A DNA stretch of 64,000 nucleotides, from positions 177,649 to 241,648 of the IMG/VR virus record IMGVR_UViG_3300032516_000001. The stretch is one strand, 5' to 3'. This document shows, piece after piece, positions 13,947-64,000 of this stretch. The stretch's first letter is position 1; each line of letters starts with the position of its first letter. The notes under the pieces are model-generated. The model worked only from the letters and a program-made list of their open reading frames with translations, made no database searches and was not told the DNA's origin. The translations under genes were made by a program, and so were the position numbers.

Positions 13947-13973
13947 GGAACTACGCCTTGGTTCATGGAACTA
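13932..13973. repeat. 20-bp tandem duplication at a stop/start junction
   Basis: tacgccttggttcatggaac occurs at 13932-13951 and 13952-13971. Confidence 0.9.
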
Positions 13974-14796: not shown

Positions 14797-14807
14797 CGCT
14801 ACACCAG

Positions 14808-15985: not shown

Positions 15986-16005
15986 TACTCACTCCTGTTG
16001 CAGGC

Positions 16006-18655: not shown

Positions 18656-18657
18656 GA

Positions 18658-19233: not shown

Positions 19234-19329
19234 GGTCCGCTCCTATACCCCAGATACATATAATCCGACACCCTCTGGGAGAGACCCGATGATGCCGGAC
19301 TTACGCCGTCCGGAGAAGACCGACCGGAC

Positions 19330-19647: not shown

Positions 19648-19673
19648 TGGTAGTCTCCTATTTAGTCTTCGGG

Positions 19674-20183
19674 TTACGTAATACGAATACGGTAAGAAAT
19701 CTTCAGCTTATCTGCCTTCGTCTTCGCGACGGCGGTGTATACACATCGCATCATTGCTGTGCCACCGGGGCTGGTATGCTGACAAAGTAATACCACCTCC
19801 TTGGCTGCGGCAAATGACAGGATACCACCTGTAGTGGTACCAGCTCCGGATGGGTAGCTATTGATATACAAAAATGTCTGGCCCGTCGACATGGTTTTAC
19901 TATCAACCGTGTTTAGAGAGCCGCCTATAGGTGTCTGTACGTTGACGTTAGCCCCAGTTGCCGCTGCACTACCAGAACCAATACGCATCTGATCGAACAC
20001 TGTAGATTTGTGTCCAGATACTAGTTCCCAGATGTGCTTTTTACCGCAAGTTACCACAAGATTGTGTGATACTACACGCTTAGTACGTACAGGGCCATGC
20101 TTACCATCCCGCCAAACCTCAACTTCCACATAACCCCCAGCTCCAACATTATCAACTCTGTTTCGATTCTGCCGATTTTCCAT
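19674..20183 (-). CDS. Putative tail/fibre-associated structural protein
   Basis: HNLVVTCG...MRIGSG...KTKADKLKISYRI, a pattern seen in phage tail-fibre N-terminal domains. Start moved to 20183 (GGAG upstream). Confidence 0.55.
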   Translation of the reverse strand: MENRQNRNRVDNVGAGGYVEVEVWRDGKHGPVRTKRVVSHNLVVTCGKKHIWELVSGHKSTVFDQMRIGSGSAAATGANVNVQTPIGGSLNTVDSKTMSTGQTFLYINSYPSGAGTTTGGILSFAAAKEVVLLCQHTSPGGTAMMRCVYTAVAKTKADKLKISYRIRIT

Positions 20184-22029: not shown

Positions 22030-22035
22030 AATATC

Positions 22036-33918: not shown

Positions 33919-33919
33919 A

Positions 33920-35116
33920 TTAACTTGCAGCAGTTAGAGTAATTCCCACAGAACCTGGAGCCCCGGGCTGCCCTTTTTCAGCTACTATGAGCCTGGCTGT
34001 TAAAGCTCCTCCTGGCACACAGATGTGAATAATTGAATTCACTGGTGCATTTGAATCTGGAATTGGTCCAGCTAAATCTTGCAAATACATGTTTTGAGTG
34101 GCGGTTGGATCCGATACCGTATAGTTAAAATCTATCATAGTTTCTTGTGATTCTTCCACGCCATTGCCCCAAAGAAGCTTGAATTCCGGATAACCATCTG
34201 CTATCCCTCTTACATATGTTATGTAAAAAGTTAGTTGTCTGATTCGTTCTGGAATTACATAGAATGGTTGGTTGGTCCAACCTCCACCAGCTGGAAGCAC
34301 TTGAGTTGCTAAGTGAACAACTCTCGGAATTTCATATGGACAACACTGATTCATGGGCGGTACTGGCGGGATTGGAACATAAATGACGGTGCATGGAATA
34401 CTGCACGTTGAAGAAGAACATGATGTACAACATGCCAACGCATTCGAGACCGTGGCCGACCTACATACCAATCCAGAGGTATTAATAACCGAAAAAGGCA
34501 TGGATTTAGCCTCAATCGGTGAATCAGCTTGTTCCATGTATTCCCAAGTAATGATATAATCGCCACCAATCATATTAACCGATAAATAAGCATAATATTC
34601 ACCAACACCGACTCTAACAGCAGCAGTTTTTGCTGTTACAGCAGTCCCCAAAGCATCATATATGGTCCAAAAGACACTAAATGGATCTATTGGCAACCCG
34701 TCATCATTTTTAACATAGAGTGGTAAATCACCTGGTCCCAGAAGAGCTCCACGTAAATACGAAAACTCTCCGGCTAATGGTATTCCATCGGCCGTTATCG
34801 GACCGCAAGAGCTATAACTCGATGGATTTACTACGAAGAATTGTTCAGTATCAACTGAAATTTGGTCGCCAGATTCGTCCTGCCACTGCCATTGAATGAA
34901 ATAATTTCCTGTTTTATCAGTCACACTCCATGGAGCATAATATTCACCCGTATTAGCTTTGATGGCGCACAAATTTTTTCCGGATATTTGTGCGCCATCC
35001 GAAGCATAAACTGTCCATCTAACATCAAAAGCGTCCTGAGGGTAACCGTTTGGATTAGTTAAGTATAATCGCAGGTCCCCTTCAGATAGCTTTGTCTGGG
35101 CTGAAAAAGCTGGCAT
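33920..35116 (-). CDS. Putative virion protein: two Ig-like repeats, Cys-rich linker and C-terminal domain
   Basis: GDLxLY..N..G.P.D.F.V.WT.Y...GEYYA occurs twice. Linker [14 protein letters not shown]...CC. Confidence 0.55.
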
Positions 35117-52265: not shown

Positions 52266-52670
52266 TCAAATACTCACCTTTAAACGCTGGATCCTGTTAA
52301 CGAAATCACGCCCACTCATATCAGCAGTAAAAGGGATGGTGATAGTTCCACGAGACGTAGTGATGGTTACATTACCGGCATCCGGATCACCAGAAACAGA
52401 CACATTAACTGGATCTTTCAGATTCGCAACAGGTACAGAACGCTTGACAAGGTCCTCAAGAACACCGTCACCAAGATTAAGGATGTCATAAAGTGTCGCG
52501 TCCGGAGTAAGGCCCTGCTCATGAAACCATGTCCAGGGCCCGATGCCGGCTGTAAGTACAGCGAGGATTCGCTTAATATCTTGTGCCACCAATGACTTGT
52601 CTGGCTTGCGAGAAGTCTCGATAGCGGTAGCAATCTTACGAAGATAATTCGCAACCTGACTAGGTTTCAT
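52266..52670 (-). CDS. KP-IA module protein (possibly extended to 52216 in the -1 frame)
   Basis: MKPSQVANYLRKIATAIETSRKPD. Confidence 0.7.
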   Translation of the reverse strand: MKPSQVANYLRKIATAIETSRKPDKSLVAQDIKRILAVLTAGIGPWTWFHEQGLTPDATLYDILNLGDGVLEDLVKRSVPVANLKDPVNVSVSGDPDAGNVTITTSRGTITIPFTADMSGRDFVNRIQRLKVSI

Positions 52671-52696: not shown

Positions 52697-53134
52697 CTAA
52701 TCAGAATTGTCGTGGACGATGATGGCGATTTTACCAATCATACCTTTGAATATCTCGGTATCAGCTATTATTTCGACAGGAATCCAAGATTCCCCATAAG
52801 CCAATGGATCTTCCATAATTTCACGCACTATAGATAAGTCATGCAATGGTTTAAATGGAAACCCGTTCGTTAGAATGAAGTCACCCTTGGTTTTTTCTTT
52901 CATATCATCCAAGAATGCGTCGACCCTCTTCTCATCATAATCAGTCATCCATTCATCACTAAATGGGTCAGTATCTGGCATCCAATTAGCAGGTAATGGA
53001 ATATAAAATCCTTTAACTCTCGGATGAGTACAAAGTAATCCGCCACTCTGATTGGAAATCAATACCCCATTATCGTCCAATACTATTATGCCTATATAGC
53101 TAGTTACAGAATGACATGACAGATCGATAAACAT
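52697..53134 (-). CDS. DUF6210-like hypothetical protein
   Basis: SNQSGGLLCTHPRVKGFYIPL pattern, matched to the family from memory only. Confidence 0.45.
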   Translation of the reverse strand: MFIDLSCHSVTSYIGIIVLDDNGVLISNQSGGLLCTHPRVKGFYIPLPANWMPDTDPFSDEWMTDYDEKRVDAFLDDMKEKTKGDFILTNGFPFKPLHDLSIVREIMEDPLAYGESWIPVEIIADTEIFKGMIGKIAIIVHDNSD

Positions 53135-53518
53135 AAATTAAAATACACGTAAGCCCTGGAGATTTTCGGCCCCAGGGCTCACACCATCCCGAGAAAGACT
53201 AGATCGCCCCAAGAGGGCCACTCGAACCATTCGATTTATTTGGTTTCTTACGCAGCCCTGGTTTGCCATAAGCTGCCAAGCCATACCGATAAATAGCCTG
53301 TACCAAGCACAATATGAATATGAGACTAGTTCATTTTGTGCGTCATGTTTTGATGGTGCTATCACTCAAAGCAAATATTATGAATCAGCCGGACACGACA
53401 CCTGGCATGATGTTCATGCTAGAGTGATAACTGCCAAAATCACGCGAGATATGGCGTTAGTACTACGAATTATGAACGAATAGTTAAAGTGTGATTATCA
53501 AACTAAACTAAAGCCCAA

Positions 53519-53956
53519 TTAAAGTTCGGACATTGCTGCGTATGCTTTTTCCAATGCTTTTTCCACAGTTTTCCCATCTCCTCCTAACTCAAATTCGGCG
53601 TCATTTGGATCCTGAAGTGGAAGTCCCTGATAATAAAATCCACCAGGCCCATTCCAAATAGCCAAATATTCCAAACCCTCATCCTCAATAATAACTGCGT
53701 TATTCTCTCCTGCGTTCAAATAATCTGAAACCTCGTTAAAATCATTTATTGTGCGCCACTCGGCGTCGCCAGAGGGATCATTCATTCCATCATATGATGT
53801 AAATTTACCTTGAAATTTGAAGTTTGGATCGTATAATGAAATACCGGCAATCAACTTTCGAAGATCTCTCGCAACTAACAGTCTATCTGGCTTACGAGAT
53901 TTCTCAATAGCAGATGCTATACGACGGAGATAACTAGCAACTTGACTCGGTTTCAT
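53519..53956 (-). CDS. KP-IA module protein with an unrelated acidic C-terminal domain
   Basis: MKPSQVASYLRRIASAIEKSRKPD. Confidence 0.7.
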   Translation of the reverse strand: MKPSQVASYLRRIASAIEKSRKPDRLLVARDLRKLIAGISLYDPNFKFQGKFTSYDGMNDPSGDAEWRTINDFNEVSDYLNAGENNAVIIEDEGLEYLAIWNGPGGFYYQGLPLQDPNDAEFELGGDGKTVEKALEKAYAAMSEL

Positions 53957-53983
53957 AATATTATTTAATCAACAAAGGTTTAA

Positions 53984-54265
53984 TTAATGATCACACCCTA
54001 AAACGCGGCGAAGCCAATCGACCTGAGGTCCAATAGCATCCCGAATTGTATTCCTAGTGCATTCCGCACCAGTCCTATACGCTTCAATGGTGGCAGTGGA
54101 AACTGGAATGTTGGCTGCAATCAGACGTTGAGAAATTATTTTACTCTGATCCTTCCCACCAAAATCTGTACGGATCACTTTTAGAATAGTGACTAGAACC
54201 TCCCGTATGGAGGTTCCAGGATCTCCGTCGATAGCAGGATTGCGCTGACCAGTTTGTCTAACCAT
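53984..54265 (-). CDS. Hypothetical protein (possible HTH)
   Basis: Start moved to ATG 54265 (GTATGTT-N5-ATG). Confidence 0.55.
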   Translation of the reverse strand: MVRQTGQRNPAIDGDPGTSIREVLVTILKVIRTDFGGKDQSKIISQRLIAANIPVSTATIEAYRTGAECTRNTIRDAIGPQVDWLRRVLGCDH

Positions 54266-54291
54266 AGGCAAACATACACCTCAACTTAGAC

Positions 54292-56607
54292 TCAATACCC
54301 AAAAATATGAATAAACTGCGACCGATGTAAATGTTTCACTGTCCCGAATTTATATTGAGTTCTATGATGAAGACCAGCCTTTTCGAGCGAAAACATGAAC
54401 GGTTCTATAAATGAATATTGATGAGTATCGAAAATATGTAAAGCCAGCACTCCATTATTACTCAAAACCTTAGCGGATAATGCCGCAAAGGGTTCAACAA
54501 AATTCTTTTGCCAATCAGCGAATGAATCGGTAGGTACTATGCCGTTATAATTTTCCACATTATAATATGGAGGCCCTGCAAGAATCATATCAAAATGTTC
54601 ATCTGTCTTCTGCATATATTGTAAAGCATCAATGCATAAAGCCTGCATTTTACACACGCCTAATGATTGAGAATCCTCAAGTATTTTTCTGATTGCATTA
54701 ATTGTCAACTCTTGAAGATCCGTGCCAACATAATTTTTTACGTATTTATTGAGGGCGCAAGCTAAAGCCCTGCCACACCAACCAGCAAACGGGTCGAATA
54801 CAGATTTCGGTCTATATGTATTTAGTAAAGCTGCGGCACCGGATGGTCGAAAATGACCTGGTGCCGAAACCATCTCCATGATTCTACGAGCCAATAATTT
54901 GTTAGTAAGTGCCTGATCTCTAGATAATATGCTCGTAACAGCTTTCCGGACAATGACCTCATCCTTCCAAGCCATAACAAATGATGGCTGTCTGTAATGA
55001 TTGGCAGAAAATCGATGAGGACAAATGGCATCCAAGTAGGTTAATCCATCTTGAATAAAAGGTAGTACCCCATCCTTCGGAAGACATGTTTTCAATCGTT
55101 CCTGAAGATCACCAAGATATTCCAATATTGGTTGATCCAACATTCTTTGAGGAGAGTGTGAATGAACAACGAAATTCACTATTTCATCAAGGTATGTTTG
55201 TTGTTTTTCATCCGGCATCTCTCTAAATTTCGAGGTTGGAAACTTGGTCGATAAAGGATCATCAGCATAAGCTGTTGCACCTCTGGATACCGGCGGGAGC
55301 TTCCTTGCCATTCGTGGGTGTATGTACGGCTGTACTATCTCAAAAAATCGCGCACGAGCAGGGGTCCCACGAACTTTGAGCAGTCTGATGTTCTTCCGTT
55401 TTACATGATAGAAGTTAACATCAAACCTACATGTCAAAGCTTCACAAATCGCGTCATAATCCGCAGCCGGAAAATACATTGCGATGGATGGGAATCCAGA
55501 ATCGTATGTTCCATCATCCATATACCAGATTGCCAGGGATAATTCACTCAAATTTTCAAAAATATTAATATTTGGATTCTTACACCCATCAGCCCCAAAT
55601 TTTTTTCTAAGTGATGGGTCATAAAATCTGGGATACCATTCACAAAGAGTATCAGTTCGAATCGATGTATATGAGATGAAATCGAATAATCGCCCATCAA
55701 CATATTTGCGCTGTTGGTGGATAATTGGTTGTAGACATTTTACTTGATCGGCACTCCATTCAGTATATTCTCTATCTGCTATCTTATGACCAACTCTGAA
55801 ATAAGCTGCCTTCCCCATAGCCACTGGAACTAGACATCCGTCTCCCAACAAATGACCAATCATTATATCAATAACCCTCTGAGATAAATCGATTGGTAAA
55901 TGCAGAAGAGAAGATCTCTCAATATCAGATTTACGAAATCTAGTCTTGATGGTAGAAGGACGAACACCATATCGTTTAGCAAGTTCTTGATAAGTAAGTC
56001 TATTCACAATGGCTTCTTTAATTTTCTCGCTGTCTAATGTTTCAATACTTAACTTACCTGATGCTACTCGTCTCGCATCTGATGAAATTGTTGATAAACC
56101 CAATTTCATCCTAAGGTATCTGACCTGACTAGCTAGTAGTCCAGCATCACGAGCAATCTGTACATCAGATTTAATCCCGTCATATAAAGATTTAACTTTG
56201 ATCAAGGCATGATCTAGATACTGGAATTTGGCGTTTTGGTGCACTCCATTGGCTATGATCAATTTTTCAAGCATATCATAAGAATATTTAGCACTGCATC
56301 GTGAACAGTATCTGCGAGAGCAAGCCAAAGAGGTATCAAGAAACTCAGAACCGCATAGATAACAATGTTTATGACGTCTTGGGTTTCTTTGTGCTAAATC
56401 TGGAACCACGTCATGTTTGGATACGATCGCGTTAATTCTGCAAGTGAGACAGATTTTTGAAGTCACCCGGGGAGTTTCATCATAGAACTGCAGACCACAA
56501 GAACATTGTTTGACTCTACCCCGATGTTTACGCCGATCATAAAATCGGTTTCTAAACTCTTCTGGAACGTCAACTCCGTCTATTTGCTCAATGTATATCT
56601 TTTTCAT
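54292..56607 (-). CDS. Zn-ribbon/HTH-LAGLIDADG-DNA amino-methyltransferase fusion
   Basis: N-terminal Cys clusters; IGHLLGDG and LAIWYMDDG (LAGLIDADG_2); FDPFAGWCGR (SAM-binding motif I) and GPPYY (motif IV). Confidence 0.8.
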   Translation of the reverse strand: MKKIYIEQIDGVDVPEEFRNRFYDRRKHRGRVKQCSCGLQFYDETPRVTSKICLTCRINAIVSKHDVVPDLAQRNPRRHKHCYLCGSEFLDTSLACSRRYCSRCSAKYSYDMLEKLIIANGVHQNAKFQYLDHALIKVKSLYDGIKSDVQIARDAGLLASQVRYLRMKLGLSTISSDARRVASGKLSIETLDSEKIKEAIVNRLTYQELAKRYGVRPSTIKTRFRKSDIERSSLLHLPIDLSQRVIDIMIGHLLGDGCLVPVAMGKAAYFRVGHKIADREYTEWSADQVKCLQPIIHQQRKYVDGRLFDFISYTSIRTDTLCEWYPRFYDPSLRKKFGADGCKNPNINIFENLSELSLAIWYMDDGTYDSGFPSIAMYFPAADYDAICEALTCRFDVNFYHVKRKNIRLLKVRGTPARARFFEIVQPYIHPRMARKLPPVSRGATAYADDPLSTKFPTSKFREMPDEKQQTYLDEIVNFVVHSHSPQRMLDQPILEYLGDLQERLKTCLPKDGVLPFIQDGLTYLDAICPHRFSANHYRQPSFVMAWKDEVIVRKAVTSILSRDQALTNKLLARRIMEMVSAPGHFRPSGAAALLNTYRPKSVFDPFAGWCGRALACALNKYVKNYVGTDLQELTINAIRKILEDSQSLGVCKMQALCIDALQYMQKTDEHFDMILAGPPYYNVENYNGIVPTDSFADWQKNFVEPFAALSAKVLSNNGVLALHIFDTHQYSFIEPFMFSLEKAGLHHRTQYKFGTVKHLHRSQFIHIFGY

Positions 56608-56724
56608 GTCGTAAAACCGATTGTTTTGTTCTATACATTATTCAGTATAGCACATTACTATACTGAAGTCAAGTAATTAGTGATTAATAGTTATAGAACA
56701 AAACAATCGGTTTTACGACATGAA
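56603..56724. repeat. Perfect 33-bp inverted repeat with a 56-bp spacer
   Basis: ttcatgtcgtaaaaccgattgttttgttctata at 56603-56635 is the exact reverse complement of 56692-56724. Confidence 0.95.
56644..56672 (-). promoter_or_regulatory. Sigma70-type promoter overlapped by a 10-bp inverted repeat
   Basis: TTGACT-N17-TATACT with an extended -10 TG. Inverted pair ttcagtatag (56641-56650) and ctatactgaa (56658-56667). Confidence 0.8.
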
Positions 56725-56744
56725 TAACCTCTTCAGATACGCCA

Positions 56745-56780
56745 AAGCCCGAGATGCTATCAACATAGCACCCCGGGCTT
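56745..56780 (-). terminator. Stem-loop downstream of the major capsid gene
   Basis: AAGCCCGGGGTGCTAT-GTTG-ATAGCATCTCGGGCTT, a 16-bp stem with G-U pairs and a weak U-tract. Confidence 0.6.
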
Positions 56781-56811
56781 CGGAGACCCACTTTGGGTCA
56801 GAGAAACGCCT

Positions 56812-57708
56812 TTAACGGGTTACGATAAGGCGCACGAGACCACGCGGGTTGTACGCGCCAATCCCGAGGTTCTCGAACATCGAGAAACCGATGGTCCGCT
56901 CTTCCGGATTATCGGCAGAAAGAACGGTCAGCTCAGTCCTAACCGGGATCCGGCCGAAGTGCTCTGGCTCGCAGCAAACGTAAACAACGCCTGCGGGGAC
57001 AAGACGCGACACGATGAACTGGGCGTTCCAGCCCGTAGCCATCAGGCCGGTCTTCCACAGCGTTGCCTGGCTCTCGATGTCGAGCACGTCGCGACCGAAT
57101 TTCCGGATGTCGGCATAATCGACCGCGTTCATGTAGACTCGAGCCACCCGAAGGTCATGACGCTCGATCTCGGCAAACGCGTCCGCGAGGACGGCCGGCG
57201 AAATCGGGGCCACAACCGGGATGTCCGGGTTCGTGCCCGCGGGGAGCGAGTCGAATCCGGCGATGGCAATGGCATCCATGATGGTGAAGACACGATCGTC
57301 TTCAGCCGCCTGGATCTGCGCCTTGCCAAGGTCCTGCATACGCTTCAGGAGGTCGTACCGACGCTCCTTGATCTGAGTTAACGGAGCCTTGAGAAGCGCC
57401 GCTATCTCAAAAAGGGGGAAGATCACACGGCGAGGTTTCATGATCGCCGTGATGGAAGTTCCCTCTTCACCGATCACGTATGCAGTGACGTCTGGATCCT
57501 TGTCGTACAGAGGCAGGGCACCATCGGGAAGCTGTTCGACCAAGAAGGTCTTACGGCCTACCGATGAGTAGTCACGCCGCTCGCGCAAGGGCTGAATCAT
57601 CGAGGCGGCCAGGCGCTTACGCCCTGCCGACGTCCCGATAAACTTGTCAACAATCTGCTCCTTGATTGTGTTGTCCACAACCTGGACGCCGAAATTATTG
57701 GTAGGCAT
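56812..57708 (-). CDS. Major capsid protein (probable HK97 fold)
   Basis: 298 aa, GC-rich codons and strong GAGGA ribosome-binding site. YIGEE-like motif, AAED, YMNxxDYADI and C-terminal ENLGIGAYNP. Position after protease, scaffold and decoration genes. Confidence 0.8.
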   Translation of the reverse strand: MPTNNFGVQVVDNTIKEQIVDKFIGTSAGRKRLAASMIQPLRERRDYSSVGRKTFLVEQLPDGALPLYDKDPDVTAYVIGEEGTSITAIMKPRRVIFPLFEIAALLKAPLTQIKERRYDLLKRMQDLGKAQIQAAEDDRVFTIMDAIAIAGFDSLPAGTNPDIPVVAPISPAVLADAFAEIERHDLRVARVYMNAVDYADIRKFGRDVLDIESQATLWKTGLMATGWNAQFIVSRLVPAGVVYVCCEPEHFGRIPVRTELTVLSADNPEERTIGFSMFENLGIGAYNPRGLVRLIVTR

Positions 57709-57745
57709 GATATTGTCCTCTCATCCTTTCAATTCATCTCGCTGC

Positions 57746-58423
57746 TCAGATGAGCAACTCAATGAACATCTCGATTCCGTGGGAGTCAGGAGGTGAAAGG
57801 ACGATGGCCATGCGAATAATGTCATATTCGCAGGCTGCGCCAGTGTGGATGGCCCCACCGAGGTTTGCTGCAGTGATCCACAGCGCCTCGTAGGAGTCTA
57901 CCCAGCGGTTGGTCAGGTATCCATTAATCGACGCGTAGAGGAACTGTCCCTCTGTGTACGGCACAGTCAGTGCGTCGCCAATGGCTCCATCAACAGCAAT
58001 TTGCTTCTGCGTCTCGTAGAGCTTGACGCCAACAGCACCACCACGAAGATGGGGGCACTTGCCAGATGCTACGCCAGGAGTATTCTCGTACGCATTGCCA
58101 AGCGCATCATTGATGAACAGCCCGAGAGGTCGGGTGTTCGCAGTGAAGGCTAAAGCAGGCGCAACTGCTCCGCCCACGACGTTGCCACCAGCAACATCAG
58201 GACGGGTAAATGCCACTGATCCCCCGAGAACGCCACGCTTCACATTTGCAGGAAGCGTAGTCGATCGCGCGAGAGCAACGGCGGTTCCAACGTTTGGGTT
58301 ACTCTGCGTGTATCCATCCGGTGCAAGAACAGGAATAGTGTCCTTGAAAATCGAATAGAGGATACGCAGGGCACCTTGGGTGAGTAGGAAATCACCCGAA
58401 GACTGTCCACCTATATCGCCCAT
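57746..58423 (-). CDS. Head decoration/cement-like protein
   Basis: RPLGLFIND...ASGK...LYASINGYLT; directly upstream of the capsid gene. Confidence 0.6.
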   Translation of the reverse strand: MGDIGGQSSGDFLLTQGALRILYSIFKDTIPVLAPDGYTQSNPNVGTAVALARSTTLPANVKRGVLGGSVAFTRPDVAGGNVVGGAVAPALAFTANTRPLGLFINDALGNAYENTPGVASGKCPHLRGGAVGVKLYETQKQIAVDGAIGDALTVPYTEGQFLYASINGYLTNRWVDSYEALWITAANLGGAIHTGAACEYDIIRMAIVLSPPDSHGIEMFIELLI

Positions 58424-58603
58424 TGGTCACTCCAGCTCTGTTGGCAAGTATCTCATCAACGTCCAAGAATTCCATCGATCCGGGGGTTTCAGTCCGTTTC
58501 CGCGAAACCATTCCATTCACGACAAAACTCAATTCAATCGATTAGACCTTCCCTCCAGTTTCTGCGGTTATCTGCGTATCTTCTATTAGTATCTGATCAA
58601 CCA

Positions 58604-58628
58604 GGGCCGCTCGGTTAAGATACGGCCC
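58604..58628 (-). terminator. Possible stem-loop after the scaffold gene
   Basis: GGGCCG-N13-CGGCCC, without a clear U-tract. Confidence 0.3.
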
Positions 58629-58637
58629 GGATGAACT

Positions 58638-59957
58638 TCATTGACCTGGGCGCTCCCAGAGATTCTCGAGGGATGCCTCTTGCTTGACCTTGCTGACCTG
58701 TACCTGGCCAATCTTCTTGGCGCCAGTGCTGGCCATGCGGACAAACCCAGTCTCACGCATGATCTGCTCCTGCTCGGATGCCTTGATCTCACGATGGGCC
58801 TGGACTTCGGGGTCATCTGAGAAGAGGTTGTCTAGGTCGCTTGTATCCTTGTCAGATGCTGTTCGACCCTCAGAGTCATCCTCATCAAATGTGATGTCCG
58901 GCGTGGCTGTAGCCGCCATCATCGGCGACGGACCGGGCATTGGTGTAACCTCTGCTGGCGGCTGCTCGAACAAGTCGGTCAGCTCAGGAGCGGGTGATGG
59001 GGACGGAAGGGCACCAGGAGCTGCCTCCTGAGATTCCTGCTGGAGCAGCTGCTGGAGCATGCTCTTGATCTCAGCATCCATGCAACCGCATTCAGTGGTT
59101 GAAGCGGAATCGGTGGCAGCGGAATCGGTGGCGGTAGAATCGGTGGCGGCGCTTGCAGTCTCCTCTTCTCCTCCTTCTTCCTCTTCCTCTTCCTCTTCTT
59201 CTTCTTCGGCCTTACCTTCAGCCTTCTCAGCTTTTGGGGGCTCTTTTCCCTTTTCCTCGGACGAAACCGTGGCGTCCTTCTTCTCAGGCTCGAGGCCTTC
59301 CGGCTTCTCTTCCTCAAGGGCGACCTTTACGGTCTTGAGAATCTCTTTGAGGGTCGGATCATCGACCTTCATAAACATGGAAGCTATATGCTCCACATGC
59401 TCCTCTTTCGGATTCTCGGGCAGGAGGCGAGCCGCGAGCTTGCAACAAGCAAGAGCACGACGGAATTTTACCTGCTTTGGAAGAGCATCCGGGGAAACCT
59501 GATCGAGCCGGCGAAGCGTAGAAGCAATAACGGGTCCGGGTAGTGCCATCAAATCACAGGCCTGGGCCTCGACTAGCTTCTGATCGTCTGAACGTAGGAG
59601 GACGCGAGCAAGACGTTCAACAGCGGAAGCTTTTCGCTCGGCAGCGGCACGGGCATTATCATATTTGCCCTTGCCACCCCACTGATCGGAATCCTTGTGG
59701 CTCCAGGTGTCATCCCGGAATTCACCGAATCCGACCTCATTCCGCTTTACATGATCCCCCTCGTATTCTTTCTTGACATGGGGGTCAGAATTCGCGGGAG
59801 TCTCGGCCCATTCATCCGGGCTGCCAGACTCATACTCAACAGGTGATGGCTGCGGATGTTCCTGGTTCATAGTGTAAGGGTCAGCGGTCCTCACGGTTGC
59901 TGCCTCACGACGAACCGGGTTGGCCGAGTCGGACCAGGTGCTTCGCCAACGTGACAT
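58638..59957 (-). CDS. Putative capsid scaffolding protein
   Basis: Acidic and disordered (poly-Glu, ATDS three times), GGAGG ribosome-binding site, between the protease and capsid genes. Confidence 0.65.
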   Translation of the reverse strand: MSRWRSTWSDSANPVRREAATVRTADPYTMNQEHPQPSPVEYESGSPDEWAETPANSDPHVKKEYEGDHVKRNEVGFGEFRDDTWSHKDSDQWGGKGKYDNARAAAERKASAVERLARVLLRSDDQKLVEAQACDLMALPGPVIASTLRRLDQVSPDALPKQVKFRRALACCKLAARLLPENPKEEHVEHIASMFMKVDDPTLKEILKTVKVALEEEKPEGLEPEKKDATVSSEEKGKEPPKAEKAEGKAEEEEEEEEEEEGGEEETASAATDSTATDSAATDSASTTECGCMDAEIKSMLQQLLQQESQEAAPGALPSPSPAPELTDLFEQPPAEVTPMPGPSPMMAATATPDITFDEDDSEGRTASDKDTSDLDNLFSDDPEVQAHREIKASEQEQIMRETGFVRMASTGAKKIGQVQVSKVKQEASLENLWERPGQ

Positions 59958-59998
59958 ATTACAAATGCCTCCTACAAGATTTCAGCTTCATCAATGCC

Positions 59999-62900
59999 TT
60001 AAAATTTGGATAGTGAAGCTATTCTACCCTTCCACCGAAAAAACTGCTGTTCTTCAGGTGTCAAAACTCTTCCGAGCTTGACCCTGCAGGCTGTGAGATA
60101 AGAGGTCTCGCTGGGGTATCCATCAATTGATCCAATATCTATTGCAATTTTATATAAATCTGATGAATAATTATGAGACCTAACAGTATCTTCAATCCAT
60201 GAAAGGATTATCAGATCTCGCGGATTCATTTCTGTAGCTATAATGGCCTTAGGCCCACCTTCATGAACGACTTTGTAAGCCCATGAAGCCCATTTGATCA
60301 ATTTACTATTGTTTTTAAATACTTTATTTAATCGCCGATTAAATTCTTGCGAAGATCTAACTACATTATCAAGTGAGTCTTCAACTCCACCAGCCGGGAC
60401 TGGCTTGGAAGGAGGAACAATTGTACCAACATCTTCAGAATTAGGTTTTAATTGCTTATCTAATCCTTTAACAATGCTCTCCAAAAGCATTTCTTGAGCT
60501 TTCTCAAGAAGCTCCTTCATTTTATCAACCGGAATTTCCGGTTCATCAGCTGGTTTATCATCATCTGATTTATCATCGGCTGGTTTGTCTTCGGTATCAC
60601 CGCCCTCTAGGATAGAATCCATTGAGGCGTCAGCATCTTCAGGCTTATCTTCAGCTGGTCCATCCTCAGGTGGCTCATCAGCTGGTTTATCCTCAGGATC
60701 TTGGGCTTTTTTAATCATAGACGCAGCCTTCTTTATACCATCAGATTTCATAAAATCCTTCCTTAATTCGAAAATAGAAACTGCATCATGCAATTTGCTA
60801 GCTAATATTTCCACATCAGGATTCAATAGATTTCGACGTACAGCACCACGAAACGCTGGACTGCGAACCCAAGAAGCCTCTATAAATTGATTACTATTCG
60901 GAACGCTTACATGTCCAACAAGCTCAGCTATAGGATGTTGTACACCACTATCATCAATAAACTGAGAACCTTTCCCCTCATATTGAACGCAGCTGCAATT
61001 ATGTACTGCTACACCATTGGCAACATAAGAATGATCATTCTCAACTTCCAAATTATAGACATCACCATGATATGGTTGAACATTTTTTGACCTAACTCTA
61101 TGAACTAAATAATTTCCAAATTTCTTAAAACCATCGAAAAAACCGTCCATTTTAGAAGATTTAATATTTTTATCTATAAATCTAGTGTTATCCGAAAATC
61201 CTATATTTTCTGGGATATGTAAAGCGAATATTGGCAACCACCCACGTTCATCTCTAATTGGTACTGATTCACCGTTAATAACATTTCTAAATTCAACTGA
61301 TTTACCATTAAATAACGCTGAATATCTTGAATAGTATCCACATCTTGCAGCAATAGTATGCATTTGTGTCAACAAATTAAAAGAAGTAGTATTACCAATG
61401 ATACCGAATTTACTATTGTGGCCATCACCATTCAACCAAGTAAACAAAATGTGCTTCTGAATATCAGAATCCCAAAGCACAACATCAGAATTTAATTTTT
61501 TCTCATTTGAATATTCACCACAGTATGTATAAAAAAATTCAGCAACGGATTTATCCATAAAAGTTACTACCGAGCAATTTATTTTTGCTAGTTTACGTCT
61601 TGCGACTACTATATCTAATGACCCATAGGCCCAATTTCTATTGCATACCTTGCATTTTAAACAATCGTCACGTCCTTTGCGATGCCTAACATTCCTTAAA
61701 TATTCAGATGGTGCCCCACAGTCAGGACAAACAGCATCTTCCGGAATTGATCTACTATTACTATTTCTAACAACAGGTTTTATGTTATTTTTAAATATTA
61801 TATCAGTCCATAACAATTTCTTACGACTAGATTTCGAAAATACTTTATTCAACAATAGTTCAGTTTCAGCCGATAACGTATCGTGTTCATGGGAACCAAA
61901 TGTAAATGTAATACCAACTCTTTCATTATTCCTCTTTATATAACACCCTTCCGACAAGAAGTACCCGATTAACCTAGCCTTATCAATTGTAGCATCGTCA
62001 GTGTTTTTAACTTCTTGTGGTATTGGAAACCCTAAATAATCACCAGGAATGACATCTTTTGCTTCTACAAAATCAAAAGATAAGTCATCTTTAATAGATG
62101 CTGCTTTTTGTATAGATTTAATATTAGAATGTTGATTCGGGTTCACTAATCTAGTATTATGTCCAGTAATATATCTTCTTTGGAATGATTTTATAGATCC
62201 ACGTTCATGTTCAATGGTCCGATGAAGTTTTTCACCGCAACCACACGCACAAAATTGTGCAGGTCGTAGAACAAAAAATGGATGCTCAGGTGTAGATCTG
62301 ATTGGATCCGGTATACCATCAATATCAAAATTTATGAGATCGCCAGCATAATGTCTTGAAATAGTTTTAGTTACTATTTCAGAATTACCGGTATGGGTTA
62401 TAATCTTATCACCTTCGACTATTTCATTAATATATCTGTGTGTTCCATCAGATTTCAATATGAAAGTATTTTCAGGAAAACATAATTGGCTGTCGTCGGC
62501 AGCAACATTTCCACATTTAGTACAAACTGTAAATAACGAAATACAATTAGAAACACCTACACCATTTGCAATATATGAGTGATCACCATCGACCTCCATA
62601 TCATAAACAAATCCATCATATTCAAATTCATCGATTTTCTTCACCCTAGAAAATAAATACCCACCAGAAATCCATCTATCAGAATTACCTGGAGTATATT
62701 TTATACTATCAAGATGAGATTTGATTTTCAATGACGGAATTTTCTTAACCCCGTCATTACGCAATCTTATTTGATAATCAATTCCACCAGAATTTGGTAA
62801 TAATTTGGTGCCATTACGTTTTACTACTGATAAAGTACTAACTATCCCGCATCTAAGTAATATCGACATATATTGGCACGCCAAGTTTTCATTTCTAGTA

Positions 62901-64000
62901 GATATGAAAACTTGCTTTGTACCTCTCTTAGTAGTAGATACGCACCCATCTGAATCAATTACTCCTGATATAAACGCAAGTTGATGATCAATAGGCCAGG
63001 ATACGATATCAGAACTAAGAAGTTTATTTAATGCTTTATTTCCAAAAACATATGAGTCAATAAGATTACGAACAGTTCTACTTGAAGAAATTAAATAATC
63101 GGCTCCCCTTCTTTGAGAACGTAAGACCTGCTTCGATTCATTTCTTTTATCTACAACACGTCCAAGTTTTTTATAACCGTTAACCCAATTATACCCAGTG
63201 CGACGACTTATATTAGATTCTTTACATAAATTTGTAAAAGAACCATCATAATTATTCATCGCATTAAAAAATTCAGTTTTACAAATCGATCCACCATCAG
63301 AAGTTATGCGAGTTTCTCCAGCTTTCCATGAAATTTGATTTATAGATGAAATAATATCCTCTATTATTTCTGGATATTTCGAATCACAAACTATTCCAAT
63401 TCCAGTACTAGAATCATGTTTATTTTGCCATTTCCAACCATCTCCAACCCACAACCCAAGAAGACGAGCTTCTTTTATTGAAATTTTAGGTTCAACTATG
63501 GTATTCGGAATCGGAGTAGCAACAACATCATTTATTTGAATGGAACCAGCTTCAAGTTTTTCGAATCTATAATCATCATGGTTCAATAAGTTACGACCAT
63601 TCTTCTTAATATAAGTTAATTCTTTACGTGGAACTACATAGAAATTATGATTATAAGTTGACTCAACTATTGGTAAACCAGAAACCTTAATTCGTCGCAT
63701 AGACCATCTATTTTGACGAATTTGAAGATTTTTAACAAGACAGACATTCCCTTTTTGGGAAAGAACCATCATGTTAGGACGAATTTCTTCAATCGGAATA
63801 ACAGAACCATCCTCGAGTGTAATGCGAGTCCCTGGGAAGAAACACCCCATACTCAGGGCGTTAACTTTTCCACCTAATATATCTCCAATTAGTAAATTAT
63901 GCTTCCGATCTGTTGCGACAAGAATATCTACATAAACTGTTTCACCGAGGTCTCGAGCTACCGCATCAACAATAAACCCCTTTGATAATTCTGGTAATTG
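59999..64000 (-). CDS. Prohead (capsid maturation) serine protease with two inteins; 5' end outside the window
   Basis: The frame is open to 64000: ...GFIVDAVAR...KVNALSMG|C. SMGC is a typical prohead-protease serine motif. Acidic C-terminal extension. Confidence 0.8.
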   Translation of the reverse strand, partial: QLPELSKGFIVDAVARDLGETVYVDILVATDRKHNLLIGDILGGKVNALSMGCFFPGTRITLEDGSVIPIEEIRPNMMVLSQKGNVCLVKNLQIRQNRWSMRRIKVSGLPIVESTYNHNFYVVPRKELTYIKKNGRNLLNHDDYRFEKLEAGSIQINDVVATPIPNTIVEPKISIKEARLLGLWVGDGWKWQNKHDSSTGIGIVCDSKYPEIIEDIISSINQISWKAGETRITSDGGSICKTEFFNAMNNYDGSFTNLCKESNISRRTGYNWVNGYKKLGRVVDKRNESKQVLRSQRRGADYLISSSRTVRNLIDSYVFGNKALNKLLSSDIVSWPIDHQLAFISGVIDSDGCVSTTKRGTKQVFISTRNENLACQYMSILLRCGIVSTLSVVKRNGTKLLPNSGGIDYQIRLRNDGVKKIPSLKIKSHLDSIKYTPGNSDRWISGGYLFSRVKKIDEFEYDGFVYDMEVDGDHSYIANGVGVSNCISLFTVCTKCGNVAADDSQLCFPENTFILKSDGTHRYINEIVEGDKIITHTGNSEIVTKTISRHYAGDLINFDIDGIPDPIRSTPEHPFFVLRPAQFCACGCGEKLHRTIEHERGSIKSFQRRYITGHNTRLVNPNQHSNIKSIQKAASIKDDLSFDFVEAKDVIPGDYLGFPIPQEVKNTDDATIDKARLIGYFLSEGCYIKRNNERVGITFTFGSHEHDTLSAETELLLNKVFSKSSRKKLLWTDIIFKNNIKPVVRNSNSRSIPEDAVCPDCGAPSEYLRNVRHRKGRDDCLKCKVCNRNWAYGSLDIVVARRKLAKINCSVVTFMDKSVAEFFYTYCGEYSNEKKLNSDVVLWDSDIQKHILFTWLNGDGHNSKFGIIGNTTSFNLLTQMHTIAARCGYYSRYSALFNGKSVEFRNVINGESVPIRDERGWLPIFALHIPENIGFSDNTRFIDKNIKSSKMDGFFDGFKKFGNYLVHRVRSKNVQPYHGDVYNLEVENDHSYVANGVAVHNCSCVQYEGKGSQFIDDSGVQHPIAELVGHVSVPNSNQFIEASWVRSPAFRGAVRRNLLNPDVEILASKLHDAVSIFELRKDFMKSDGIKKAASMIKKAQDPEDKPADEPPEDGPAEDKPEDADASMDSILEGGDTEDKPADDKSDDDKPADEPEIPVDKMKELLEKAQEMLLESIVKGLDKQLKPNSEDVGTIVPPSKPVPAGGVEDSLDNVVRSSQEFNRRLNKVFKNNSKLIKWASWAYKVVHEGGPKAIIATEMNPRDLIILSWIEDTVRSHNYSSDLYKIAIDIGSIDGYPSETSYLTACRVKLGRVLTPEEQQFFRWKGRIASLSKF
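60998..62482 (-). mobile_element. Intein 2 (495 aa) with LAGLIDADG endonuclease and Zn-ribbon inserts
   Basis: Starts CFPENT, has TPEHPF block B, LIGYFLSEG and TWLNGDG, and ends VYNLEV...VHN|C. Confidence 0.9.
62546..63844 (-). mobile_element. Intein 1 (433 aa) with LAGLIDADG endonuclease
   Basis: Starts CFFPGT, has TYNHNF, LLGLWVGDG and ISGVIDSDG, and ends VYDMEV...VSN|C. Confidence 0.9.

What the first reader, a model, noticed from the sequence alone, without database searches (positions are those of the whole stretch)
54292..56607. LAGLIDADG endonuclease fused to a DNA amino-methyltransferase next to the capsid gene
One ORF carries Zn ribbons, HTH-like segments, a two-motif LAGLIDADG domain and a C-terminal N6A/N4C methyltransferase (FDPFAG, GPPYY). 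I saw no intein splice motifs around the nuclease. It could be a self-protecting selfish element (cut unmethylated rival alleles, methylate self) or a methyltransferase targeted by a LAGLIDADG DNA-binding domain. The gene is AT-rich beside a GC-rich capsid gene, consistent with an insertion.
Basis: partly seen in the sequence, partly recalled or inferred. Interest (0 to 1): 0.65.

Follow-up and report, generated by a model that had tools for sequence, protein, structure and literature searches.

The report
Homing nuclease fused to DNA methylase
A giant sediment phage carries, right after its capsid gene, one intact gene that joins a site-specific DNA-cutting enzyme to a DNA-methylating enzyme; relatives hold the same methylase joined to other cutting enzymes at that spot, so it looks like a mobile "cut rivals, mark self" module, though neither activity has been tested.

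Summary
Window 54292-56607 (-) is one intact 771-aa ORF with two Zn ribbons, HTH modules, an I-SceI-like two-motif LAGLIDADG_2 domain, a helical domain and a Rossmann amino-methyltransferase. It is not an intein and not an assembly join.

Five full-length homologues (53-80% identity) exist. All domains are under purifying selection. Single contigs in three sediment runs span the domain junction.

The AT-rich-means-insertion argument fails. The gene has the genome's background GC (39%), and the capsid block is one of several GC-rich islands, also in relatives.

- Every one of 12 fusion genes with known context, down to 23% identity, lies directly 3' of the same capsid gene family.
- That slot is hypervariable among about 500 related huge phages.
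- The fusion is scattered on the capsid tree.
- The same methylase module is fused there to endonuclease VII/HNH-type heads instead of LAGLIDADG.
- The catalytic Asp of both LAGLIDADG motifs is kept in about 30 of 32 diverse fusions.
- Motif IV is SPPY in the wider family but GPPY in this subclade.
- A 36-nt inverted repeat encloses a sigma-70-like promoter and buries the start codon, as in T4 homing-endonuclease genes.

Best reading: a free-standing nuclease-methylase cassette used for homing or competition, with methylation as self-immunity or cargo. Both activities are untested.

The parts
54292..56607 (-). Whole ORF (771 aa, P0001): Zn ribbons - HTH - LAGLIDADG_2 - helical domain - Rossmann methyltransferase
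   Evidence: Five full-length homologues at 53-80% identity. pN is far below pS in every domain.
56293..56520 (-). Two putative Zn ribbons (aa 30-105; C35xC37...C53xxC56 and C82xxC85...C101xxC104)
   Evidence: The cysteines are invariant or near-invariant in alignment A1. There is a weak match to the Zn-ribbon part of an HNH phrog. The fold is low-confidence here.
55918..56217 (-). Helix-turn-helix DNA-binding modules (aa 131-230)
   Evidence: phrog_664 and phrog_9759 'DNA binding protein'. Weak matches to sigma-70 region 4 and AsnC-type HTH. Helical with pLDDT about 70-78.
55363..55890 (-). Monomeric two-motif LAGLIDADG endonuclease domain, I-SceI-like (aa 240-415). Catalytic Asp D256 at 55840-55842 and D365 at 55513-55515.
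   Evidence: PF03161 at 53.1 bits. I-SceI by sequence, E 2.6e-5, and by fold, TM 0.70-0.72. Asp conserved across about 30 of 32 fusions.
54856..55290 (-). Conserved helical domain that always precedes the methyltransferase core (aa 440-584; family motifs FPHRF, PxxFxP)
   Evidence: Part of the profile that finds 4221 relatives. pLDDT >95. No solved-structure match for its first roughly 60 residues. The whole module matches viral 'N4-cytosine DNA methyltransferase' clusters with TM 0.80-0.86.
54295..54855 (-). Rossmann-fold amino-methyltransferase core (aa 585-771). Motif I DPFAGW at 54778-54795; motif IV AGPPYY at 54562-54579.
   Evidence: Motif order is I before IV, permuted relative to PF01555 beta-class enzymes. 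Motif IV is S in 85 of 95 relatives and G only in this subclade.
56600..56727 (-). 36-nt inverted repeat (arms 56600-56635 and 56692-56727, 97% complementary). The downstream arm contains the ATG (56605-56607).
   Evidence: The RNA fold is -64 kcal/mol, z -10.9, with 0 of 200 shuffles as stable. Logan contigs break at these arms in 4 runs.
56644..56672 (-). Sigma-70-like promoter TTGACT-17-TATACT with an extended -10 TG, inside the 56-nt loop of the inverted repeat
   Evidence: 10 of 12 consensus matches. The sequence was read.
56742..56783 (-). GC-rich hairpin just after the capsid gene stop (terminator-like, no T run)
   Evidence: I2. Similar AAGCCC...GGGCTT hairpins lie after the capsid gene in L003, L084 and L085.
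56812..57708 (-). Major capsid protein gene. Its stop codon is the fixed left border of the variable slot.
   Evidence: phrog_2522, E 8e-46. DNA homology with 80 relatives ends at 56810-56825. Close genome pairs lose homology exactly at the capsid stop.

Best explanation
The ORF is a real, intact, single-chain nuclease-methyltransferase of a roughly 400-kb sediment phage. It combines a Zn-ribbon/HTH DNA-binding head, an I-SceI-like LAGLIDADG homing endonuclease, and a TRD-less DNA amino-methyltransferase that is a circularly permuted relative of the PF01555 N4C/N6A enzymes.

Shown:
- It is a free-standing cassette, neither intron nor intein, in a hypervariable slot that begins at the stop codon of the major capsid gene.
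- It has its own sigma-70-like promoter.

Inferred:
- In read-through capsid transcripts a 36-bp hairpin buries the start codon, so only transcripts from the promoter inside the loop are translated.
- The LAGLIDADG domain cuts a long specific site in related co-infecting phages that lack the cassette or carry another allele. That site is probably at or near the capsid-gene 3' end or the slot, so the cassette is copied in or the rival is excluded.
- The tethered methyltransferase marks the same site on the phage's own DNA as self-immunity, and/or is an anti-restriction cargo that rewards carriers.
For: Architecture and integrity.

Not an artefact:
- An identical contig from another sample, L004.
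- P0001 is seen on 4 contigs.
- Single Logan contigs from runs X1, X2 and X4 span the LAGLIDADG-methyltransferase junction.

Selection on every domain: pN 0.15-0.30 against pS 0.66-0.81.

Nuclease competence: the Asp of both motifs is kept in about 30 of 32 fusions that share only about 20-30% identity.

Nuclease and methylase are selected together:
- 26 of 71 long family members carry LAGLIDADG_2.
- 25 carry the LAGLIDADG phrog, 5 an endonuclease VII phrog and several an HNH phrog.
- In the same capsid-adjacent slot the module is fused to EndoVII/HNH (L035, E 1e-10) or to the phrog_2340 endonuclease (L011, L041).

Fixed site: all 12 fusions with context lie directly 3' of the capsid gene. Capsid identity is 63-100% while the fusion is 23-66%.

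Mobility-like pattern:
- Among genomes whose capsids are about 90% identical, fusion identity to the window ranges from 31% to 66%.
- The three GPPY-type fusions need three changes on the capsid+u1 tree. Each is nested among cassette-less genomes with starred support.
- A-type (GPPY fusion), C-type (methyltransferase with another nuclease head) and empty-slot relatives co-occur in one metagenome, 3300032053.

Regulation. The same promoter-in-hairpin logic is described for I-TevI-III, segB and mobE (PMC2988022, section 12). Homing endonuclease genes cluster beside capsid and other essential genes (PMC10448857).
Against: No activity has been measured.
- Motif IV is AGPPY, not the family's TSPPY, so methylation may be weak, altered or absent.
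- The cleavage site is unknown.
- I found no co-conversion signal or unusually conserved block at the capsid 3' end.
- Close genome pairs differ by replacement of several kb, not by a clean insertion of the gene.
- The fusions are old and divergent, so many losses from an ancestral resident would fit the scatter as well as homing does.
- The long inverted repeat is not conserved in the 66%-identical relative L003.
- Many family members carry only HTH or Zn heads, so the methylase can clearly work without a nuclease.
Confidence: 0.5

Rival explanations
1. The gene is primarily a phage DNA methyltransferase for anti-restriction or epigenetic marking. Its core lacks a target-recognition domain, and the Zn-ribbon, HTH and LAGLIDADG head serves only to bind and aim it. 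The nuclease is silent or vestigial.
For: - The methyltransferase core has no TRD, and the module is fused to many non-nuclease heads such as HTH_23, HTH_28, zf-CGNR and ROS/MucR and ParB_N.
- In L029 the same slot holds a Mom-family DNA-modification gene, so the slot collects DNA-modification functions.
- LAGLIDADG scaffolds are known as pure DNA binders; WhiA (3hyj, 8dy9) appears among the fold matches.
Against: - The metal-binding Asp of both LAGLIDADG motifs is conserved in about 30 of 32 highly divergent fusions. No other role is known for this residue; that rests on established LAGLIDADG enzymology, not on a test here.
- Unrelated nuclease folds (EndoVII/HNH, phrog_2340) replace LAGLIDADG in front of the same module at the same slot. 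That points to selection for cutting rather than for one particular binding scaffold.
Confidence: 0.25
2. In this subclade the methyltransferase domain is catalytically dead and is kept as a DNA- or SAM-binding or structural module. The protein is then simply a large free-standing LAGLIDADG homing endonuclease.
For: - Motif IV has Gly where 85 of 95 relatives have Ser, and the preceding Thr is Ala.
- The D/N/S side chain of this motif contacts the target amino group in solved amino-methyltransferases (established knowledge, not tested here).
- Pfam DNA-methylase scores for P0001 itself are below cut-off.
Against: - AGPP(Y/F) is itself conserved across members down to 37% identity, including P0010.
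- Motif I, the FxP segment and the post-IV motifs are invariant.
- The Rossmann core has the most invariant columns of all the domains (43%) and pN/pS of about 0.26 (dN/dS about 0.1).
- A dead domain would not normally keep the SAM-binding motifs intact.
Confidence: 0.15
3. It is a single-chain restriction-modification-like weapon that does not home. The phage methylates its own DNA and uses the nuclease against the host chromosome or superinfecting phages, as Type IIG/IIC enzymes would.
For: - Nuclease and methylase sit in one chain.
- It has its own early-type sigma-70 promoter.
- Three family members match the Eco57I methylase family.
Against: - I-SceI-type LAGLIDADG enzymes recognise sites of about 18 bp or longer (established knowledge). 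Such sites are too rare for general restriction.
- LAGLIDADG enzymes have not been described in R-M systems (PMC9957025, discussion).
- The strict linkage to one genomic site, 3' of the capsid gene (12 of 12), is what a site-specific homing element shows, not a general defence gene.
Confidence: 0.08
4. It is an artefact: a chimeric assembly, an intein, or a recent foreign insertion revealed by composition.
For: Only the local GC step at 56.7 kb, and contig breaks at the inverted repeat in Logan unitigs.
Against: - The breaks lie in the intergenic inverted repeat, not in the ORF, and single contigs cover 53500-56632 in two runs.
- Five full-length homologues exist from other samples.
- There are no Hint/intein motifs.
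- The ORF has the genome's background GC and GC3, while the capsid block is the outlier, also in relatives.
Confidence: 0.02

Closest known systems
I-SceI and other monomeric LAGLIDADG_2 (PF03161) homing endonucleases
   Same: - Two LAGLIDADG motifs in one chain, both with the catalytic Asp.
- Sequence match (E 2.6e-5) and fold match (TM 0.70-0.72).
   Different: - I-SceI is encoded in a group I intron and is about 235 aa with no other domains.
- This protein is free-standing, carries Zn-ribbon and HTH modules in front and a 330-aa methyltransferase module behind.
Free-standing homing endonuclease genes of T4-like phages (seg, mob genes; segD lies between the capsid genes 23 and 24)
   Same: - An intergenic cassette next to a conserved essential gene.
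- Sporadic distribution among relatives.
- A promoter placed inside a hairpin that hides the translation start on read-through transcripts (PMC2988022).
   Different: - The T4 enzymes are GIY-YIG or HNH and have no methyltransferase.
- Their self-immunity rests on sequence differences at the target. Here a tethered methylase is available for that role (inferred).
LAGLIDADG domain inside the actinophage cluster F DNA methylase (Taj_79 and eight others; Genes 2023, PMC9957025)
   Same: - A non-intein LAGLIDADG endonuclease domain in frame with a phage DNA methylase.
- The authors raise the same two readings, a selfish element or a single-chain R-M enzyme, and leave the function open.
   Different: - It is a different phage group, and there was no detectable similarity in my phage-database search (one search lists no actinophage).
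- There the domain is an insertion in a few members of a methylase family. Here the fusion is widespread: 26 of 71 long representatives, plus an ESM Atlas cluster of 57.
- Here it is tied to one genomic site and alternates with other nuclease heads.
PF01555 beta-class N4-cytosine/N6-adenine DNA methyltransferases (TTHA0409, M.PvuII, N4CMT, CcrM, DpnA)
   Same: - The profile matches them (3e-13 to 3e-3).
- It shares the 'PxxFPxxLA...VLDPFAGSG' block and the (S/D)PPY block.
- The family consensus is TSPP(Y/F), the form typical of N4C enzymes (established knowledge).
   Different: - The motif order is permuted (X/I before IV).
- There is no TRD between or after the motifs.
- This subclade has GPPY.
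- The nearest solved folds are tRNA m2G enzymes Trm11, TrmN and Trm14 (Z about 17), which reflects the generic Rossmann core.
Type IIG/IIC single-chain restriction-modification enzymes (MmeI, BpuSI, Eco57I)
   Same: Nuclease and methyltransferase are in one polypeptide, so cutting and protective methylation are inherited together.
   Different: - Those use a PD-(D/E)XK nuclease, a gamma-class NPPY methylase and a C-terminal TRD, and they recognise short sites.
- Here the nuclease is a LAGLIDADG domain, expected to recognise a long site, and there is no TRD.
WhiA and LAGLIDADG maturases (LAGLIDADG scaffold reused for binding only)
   Same: A LAGLIDADG fold combined with an HTH domain; both appear among the fold matches.
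   Different: Those proteins have lost the catalytic acidic residues (established knowledge). This family keeps them.

Membership tests
LAGLIDADG homing endonuclease, monomeric LAGLIDADG_2 type | Pfam PF03161 above the gathering score | tested here: met
   53.1 bits against a cut-off of 25, aa 247-411.
LAGLIDADG homing endonuclease, monomeric LAGLIDADG_2 type | Two LAGLIDADG helices in one chain, each ending in a conserved acidic residue | tested here: met
   LLGDG (D256) and MDDG (D364/D365). Both are invariant in 5 homologues and kept in about 30 of 32 fusions.
LAGLIDADG homing endonuclease, monomeric LAGLIDADG_2 type | Alpha-beta-beta-alpha-beta-beta-alpha x2 fold like I-SceI | tested here: met
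   Foldseek hits 1r7m/3oor with E about 2e-10 and TM(target) 0.70-0.72 over about 212 columns. The model has pLDDT 80-95 in this domain, though the whole-protein model is only 62.9.
LAGLIDADG homing endonuclease, monomeric LAGLIDADG_2 type | Site-specific double-strand cleavage of a long target | not testable with these tools
   Needs an in vitro or in vivo cleavage assay.
Homing (mobile) genetic element | Sporadic presence at one fixed genomic site among related genomes, with a history decoupled from the flanks | tested here: met
   12 of 12 fusions lie 3' of the capsid gene. Three changes are forced for three carriers on the capsid+u1 tree. Fusion identity ranges from 31% to 66% among genomes whose capsids are about 90% identical.
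Homing (mobile) genetic element | Clean presence/absence alleles and co-conversion of flanking markers | tested here: not met
   Close pairs differ by replacement of 2-6 kb, not by a clean insertion. The capsid 3' end is no more similar among carriers than among others. The carriers are old and divergent, so this test is weak.
Intein | Hint/splicing blocks flanking the endonuclease | tested here: not met
   P0001 has no Hint, Intein_splicing or Hom_end hit. The same scan finds them in ORF 59999-63850.
PF01555-type N4C/N6A DNA methyltransferase | SAM-binding motif I and the preceding FxP block | tested here: met
   HFRPS...DPFAGWCGR. F586, P588, D605, G609 and R613 are invariant or near-invariant across 71-95 relatives. 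The block aligns to 'PAPFP...VLDPFAGSG' of TTHA0409 and the N4C methyltransferases.
PF01555-type N4C/N6A DNA methyltransferase | Catalytic motif IV (D/N/S)PP(Y/F/W) | tested here: not met
   AGPPYY in P0001 and its subclade (8 of 95). The rest of the family has SPP(Y/F) in 85 of 95.
PF01555-type N4C/N6A DNA methyltransferase | Pfam gathering score and beta-class order (IV before I) | tested here: not met
   17.6 bits against 26.7 for P0001. 48 of 71 relatives match at E<=1e-3, the best at 1e-19. The order here is I before IV, so the profile aligns in two swapped pieces.
PF01555-type N4C/N6A DNA methyltransferase | Methylation of DNA (m4C or m6A) | not testable with these tools
   Needs a SMRT or Nanopore methylome, or a biochemical assay.
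Type IIG/IIC restriction-modification enzyme | PD-(D/E)XK nuclease plus gamma-class NPPY methylase plus TRD in one chain | tested here: not met
   The nuclease is LAGLIDADG, there is no TRD, and the motif is GPPY/SPPY. Only the one-chain logic is shared.
T4-type hairpin-regulated homing endonuclease gene | A stable RNA structure hides the translation start on read-through transcripts, and the gene's own promoter lies inside the structure | tested here: inconclusive
   The structure is present in the window: a 36-nt inverted repeat, -64 kcal/mol, z -10.9, with the promoter in the loop and the ATG in the stem. It is not conserved in L003, L084 or L085, and no transcript data exist.

The most novel reading that the evidence does not exclude
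This is one allele of a previously undescribed class of phage 'homing restriction-modification' cassettes. A constant, TRD-less DNA methyltransferase module is covalently tethered to interchangeable homing-type nucleases (LAGLIDADG, endonuclease VII/HNH and others). The tether lets the element immunise its own copy of a long target by methylation instead of by sequence change. That would allow it to aim at an essential, slowly evolving capsid-gene region and persist at that one site across a clade of hundreds of huge phages. The GPPY variant of motif IV could reflect an altered substrate, for example a modified base.
Probability: 0.3. Interest if true: 0.8.

Novelty: new variant of a known kind. 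Interest (0 to 1): 0.62.

Why it matters
Homing endonucleases and restriction-modification systems are the two classic selfish nuclease systems, and they are usually treated as separate. Here one chain joins a homing-type nuclease to a methyltransferase. The fusion recurs with swapped nuclease folds at one conserved site next to the capsid gene of a large clade of roughly 400-kb phages. That would be a natural bridge between the two systems, with methylation-based self-immunity for a homing element.

- It offers a directly testable system: one gene, two point-mutable active sites, and natural target candidates in sequenced relatives.
- It is a source of long-site nucleases with a built-in, separable methylase that might be useful as coupled cut/protect reagents.
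- It bears on how huge phages compete and exchange structural-gene neighbourhoods.

If the nuclease or the methylase proves inactive, the gene is an ordinary free-standing homing endonuclease or an orphan phage methylase with an unusual targeting head.

Tried and rejected
1. Composition as evidence of insertion: rejected. The ORF matches the genome background and the capsid block is the outlier.

2. Assembly join: rejected.

3. Intein: rejected.

4. Single-sequence search of the methyltransferase domain against solved structures gave nothing useful. The word search with the domain alone found only fragments of the same family. NCBIfam gave only sub-threshold RNA, protein and tRNA methyltransferase hits. 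The profile search and the profile-against-PDB search were needed.

5. Fold searches of the good methyltransferase model returned generic Rossmann amino-methyltransferases, with Trm11/TrmN/Trm14 on top. They cannot distinguish a DNA substrate from an RNA substrate. The DNA assignment rests on the sequence profile, on Pfam hits in relatives and on the ESM Atlas clusters.

6. I looked for a candidate target or a co-conversion tract at the capsid 3' end, using segment-wise identity and column conservation over 75 relatives. There was no signal.

7. I looked for clean insertion boundaries in close genome pairs. I found only cassette replacement, bounded on one side by the capsid stop codon.

8. 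Conservation of the promoter-in-hairpin in relatives: not found.

9. Invertible-promoter reading of the inverted repeat: considered and set aside. The 56-bp spacer is short, and the orientation is the same in the window and in L004. It was not tested directly.

10. RNA evidence: no RNA run holds the region.

11. The full-length model has pTM 0.41, so I drew no conclusion about how the nuclease and methylase domains face each other.

12. One script call returned no answer and was repeated.

dN/dS therefore used only the 66% homologue, whose synonymous sites are saturated.
Full report
**1. What is there**

Window 54292-56607 on the - strand is a single ATG-initiated ORF of 771 aa without stops (protein P0001). 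The window is the last 64 kb of a 241,648-bp IMG/VR virus record that CheckV rates 57% complete, so the genome is probably about 400 kb. Relatives found through the capsid protein have genomes of up to 448 kb. Four sediment-metagenome runs hold the region.

**2. Domain anatomy**

- *Zn ribbons.* Residues 30-105 carry two Cys4-type Zn-ribbon signatures whose cysteines are invariant or near-invariant in five homologues. This part folds with low confidence.
- *HTH modules.* Residues 131-230 are helix-turn-helix modules, matching phrog_664 and phrog_9759 and, weakly, sigma-70 region 4 and AsnC HTH.
- *LAGLIDADG domain.* Residues 240-415 are a LAGLIDADG_2 domain at 53.1 bits against a cut-off of 25.
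  - It matches I-SceI by sequence with E 2.6e-5; 'LSLAIWYMDDG' aligns to I-SceI 'MSLAYWFMDDG' and 'PYIHPRMARKLP' to 'PYLIPQMMYKLP'.
  - It matches I-SceI by fold with TM(target) 0.70-0.72.
- *Methyltransferase module.* Residues 440-771 form one conserved module, a helical domain followed by a Rossmann methyltransferase. With 95 relatives in the alignment it folds at pLDDT 95.9 and pTM 0.92.
- *No intein.* P0001 has no Hint or intein family hit, although the same scan finds several in the next large ORF, 59999-63850.

**3. What kind of methyltransferase**

The single sequence gives only sub-threshold Pfam hits and nothing in PDB. A profile of the C-terminal module finds 4221 proteins at E<=1e-3 and 1302 at E<=1e-10 among 1.84 billion representatives.

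- Of 71 long members, 48 match PF01555 N6_N4_Mtase, the best at 1e-19.
- 68 of the 71 match phrog_12517, and 43, 30 and 20 match DNA-methyltransferase phrogs.
- The family profile hits solved DNA amino-methyltransferases:
  - TTHA0409, a putative modification methylase, at 3e-13.
  - Two N4-cytosine methyltransferases at about 1e-9.
  - M.PvuII, DpnA and CcrM at weaker scores.
- The alignments come in two swapped pieces. In this family the 'PxxFxPxxA...DPxAGWGGR' block (motifs X/I) precedes 'TSPP(Y/F)' (motif IV). In the beta-class enzymes it follows. The family is therefore a circular permutant of that class, with no TRD.
- Fold searches return generic (D/N)PPY amino-methyltransferases, with Trm11, TrmN and Trm14 at Z 16.6-17.4. 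They do not resolve the substrate.
- ESM Atlas clusters that match the whole module (TM 0.80-0.86) are viral and auto-named cytosine-N4 DNA methyltransferases. One 57-member cluster is already auto-named 'LAGLIDADG DNA endonuclease family/DNA methylase domain-containing protein'.
- Motif IV is Ser in 85 of 95 relatives, Cys in 2, and Gly in 8, namely P0001 and its subclade down to 37% identity. Whether it still supports catalysis cannot be decided here.

**4. Is the nuclease likely to be active**

I searched all fetched proteins with a domain HMM built from the five orthologues. In about 30 of 32 fusion representatives that share only about 20-30% identity, both motifs keep the acidic residue ('LLGDG' and 'DDG'). 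The exceptions are the first of two modules in P0002 and protein P0155. By established LAGLIDADG enzymology these residues bind the catalytic metal and are lost in binding-only derivatives such as WhiA or maturases. Their conservation argues for a working nuclease.

**5. Real gene, under selection**

- Five full-length homologues at 80, 66, 59 and 53% identity, plus P0010 at 37%, come from other samples.
- L004 is an identical independent contig across the capsid-fusion junction.
- Single Logan contigs cover 53500-56632 in two runs and 53500-56064 in a third, so they span the LAGLIDADG-methyltransferase junction.
- Against the 66% homologue every domain has pN 0.15-0.30 and pS 0.66-0.81. The LAGLIDADG and Rossmann domains are the most conserved.
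- Between the window and L003 the capsid protein is 89% identical and the fusion 66%. The flanking scaffold-like and small proteins are 40-61% identical.

**6. Composition**

The ORF has GC 0.39 and GC3 0.31, like most of the window. The capsid gene has GC 0.59 and GC3 0.72. It belongs to a GC-rich block at 56.7-60.0 kb, and further GC-rich islands lie at 12-20 and 22-34 kb. Relatives show the same capsid-block elevation over an AT-rich background: L003 at 46-52% against 31-35%, and L091 at 41% against 28%. The GC step is therefore a property of the structural genes of this lineage, not a mark of insertion of the ORF. In the GC-rich relative L084 (61-70% GC) the fusion gene is the GC-poor segment at 48-59%. 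That is a weak hint of foreignness there.

**7. Genomic context across relatives**

The capsid protein finds 505 viral contigs, and 80 loci were examined. Upstream synteny (439-aa, 225-aa and capsid genes) is universal. DNA homology to the window ends at the capsid stop codon in all of them.

Contents of the slot downstream:
- 33 loci with at least 2.5 kb of sequence have no family member.
- The P0001-type fusion occurs in the window, L004, L063 (=L003) and L084.
- More distant LAGLIDADG-methyltransferase fusions occur in L080, L081 and L001.
- LAGLIDADG plus HTH without a methylase occurs in L074 and L075.
- The methyltransferase module with a different N-terminal part occurs in L011, L012, L025, L029, L035, L040, L041, L044 and L066.

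Those different N-terminal parts are other nucleases. L035 has endonuclease VII/HNH (phrog_1035, E 1e-10), and L011 and L041 have the phrog_2340 'endonuclease'. L029 has a Mom-family gene in the slot before the methylase.

Every fusion for which context could be fetched lies directly 3' of a capsid gene of this family, in the same orientation. That is 12 of 12, including P0089, P0050 and P0132 at about 24% identity. Capsid identity across these is 63-100%.

**8. Distribution on the tree**

On a capsid+u1 maximum-likelihood tree of 70 rows, the three GPPY-type carriers need three state changes. Each sits inside well-supported groups of cassette-less genomes: L063 with L064 at SH-aLRT 98, and L084 in a 99-supported group with L048, L055 and L057. 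The tree used the quick search with LG+G4. Twenty-two rows with too little downstream sequence were left unscored.

Fusion identity to the window is 66%, 37% and 31% in genomes whose capsids are 89-92% identical and whose u1 proteins are 61-62% identical where u1 is available. The cassette's history is therefore decoupled from its flanks.

This fits repeated homing or allele exchange. It equally fits ancient alleles with many losses. Close pairs differ by replacement of several kb rather than by a clean insertion, and no co-conversion signal was found.

**9. Regulation**

After the capsid stop comes a GC-rich hairpin at 56742-56783. It is also present after the capsid gene in L003, L084 and L085. 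Next comes a 36-nt inverted repeat, 97% complementary, with arms at 56600-56635 and 56692-56727. Its 56-nt loop holds TTGACT-17-TATACT with an extended -10 TG. The downstream arm contains the ATG.

As RNA the element folds at -64 kcal/mol, with z -10.9. Transcripts that read through from the capsid gene would bury the start codon. Transcripts from the loop promoter lack the upstream arm.

This is the arrangement described for I-TevI, I-TevII, I-TevIII, segB and mobE in T4-type phages (PMC2988022, section 12). It is not conserved in L003, and no RNA data exist, so it is an inference for this phage only.

**10. Interpretation**

Shown:
- The architecture.
- The gene's integrity and the purifying selection on it.
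- Membership of the LAGLIDADG_2 family.
- Kinship of the C-terminal module with DNA amino-methyltransferases.
- The fixed site 3' of the capsid gene.
- The sporadic distribution.
- The exchange of nuclease heads on a constant methylase module.

Inferred:
- That the nuclease cuts rival alleles.
- That the methylase protects the element's own site, or serves as anti-restriction cargo.
- That the hairpin gates translation.

The head-swapping result is the strongest argument that cutting and methylating are selected together. It argues against the idea that LAGLIDADG is merely a DNA-binding adaptor. The GPPY motif is the main reason for caution about the methylase in this particular clade.

**11. 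Comparison with the literature**

Homing endonuclease genes are known to cluster next to capsid, terminase and RNR genes (PMC10448857). T4 segD lies between the capsid genes 23 and 24 (PMC2988022). A non-intein LAGLIDADG domain in frame with a phage DNA methylase was reported for nine actinophage cluster F methylases. [quoted passage not shown] My full-text searches found no experimental study of a LAGLIDADG-methyltransferase fusion. The library does not cover most subscription journals, so this absence is weak.

**12. Verdict**

The compositional argument is wrong. I rate this a new variant of known kinds (free-standing homing endonuclease, phage orphan methylase and single-chain R-M logic). 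It is already visible to automatic annotation but uncharacterised. The new findings are its strict linkage to the capsid-gene 3' end across a large huge-phage clade and the interchangeable nuclease heads.

No alternative genetic code was used.

Noticed in passing
window 12000-20000, 22000-34000, 56700-60000: The window has a sharp GC mosaic: islands of 52-62% GC in a background of about 39%. The causes differ. The capsid gene has GC3 0.72 (codon usage), whereas the giant ORF has GC1 0.71, GC2 0.76 and GC3 0.30 (amino-acid composition). The capsid block is also GC-elevated in AT-rich relatives (L003, L091), while other relatives are 61-70% GC throughout (L084). It is unexplained whether this is expression-linked codon bias or a relic of a GC-rich ancestor.
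   Followed up: partly
window 22036-33918 (-): A 3960-aa ORF made almost entirely of collagen-like G-X-Y triplets (Gly 31%, Thr 18%, Pro 13%) with a non-repetitive C-terminal domain. It is presumably a giant fibre protein.
   Followed up: partly
window 59999-64000 (-), runs off the window end: A large ORF of at least 1283 aa that holds at least two intein-type insertions: Intein_splicing in two stretches, plus LAGLIDADG_3, Hom_end and Hint_2. The orthologous gene is 905-1489 aa in relatives, also with intein hits, and it lies two genes upstream of the capsid gene. The host protein was not identified.
   Followed up: no
G000:C1:41175-42074, outside the window (L087:1165-2064, -): A second free-standing LAGLIDADG_2 gene in the same phage: 299 aa, 73.6 bits, with a C-terminal Zn ribbon, no methylase, and 24% identity to P0001's domain. 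It sits next to a YfbR-like HD 5'-deoxynucleotidase gene and a MazG-like gene.
   Followed up: partly
L029:2528-4021 (+), slot 3' of the capsid gene in a relative: A 497-aa protein with Zn fingers and a Mom-family domain (PF25680, E 1.6e-19) occupies the capsid-adjacent slot. It is followed by a methyltransferase-module gene, so the slot collects DNA-modification genes.
   Followed up: no
L090:9033-9572 (+): A GmrSD_C (type IV restriction-like) domain protein lies about 1 kb downstream of the LAGLIDADG-methylase fusion in a relative.
   Followed up: no
L001:5122-8811 (+) (LR745208.1, a 485-kb uncultured phage): The distant homologue P0002 (1229 aa) has two HTH+LAGLIDADG modules. The first has degenerate motifs (GNG and DRG). 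It has an SPPY methylase, and its Zn ribbons are at the C-terminus rather than the N-terminus, so the same parts are rearranged.
   Followed up: partly
window 56606-56721: In all four sediment runs the Logan assemblies break at the arms of the inverted repeat and give a separate 116-nt piece. Short-read graphs therefore cannot fix the orientation of the promoter-bearing loop. The window and L004 agree on one orientation.
   Followed up: partly
window 52697-53134 (-): A DUF6210-family protein (33.7 bits against a cut-off of 25) lies among otherwise unannotated small ORFs downstream of the fusion. ORFs 52266-52670 and 53519-53956 share a motif of about 39 aa with one L003 protein.
   Followed up: no
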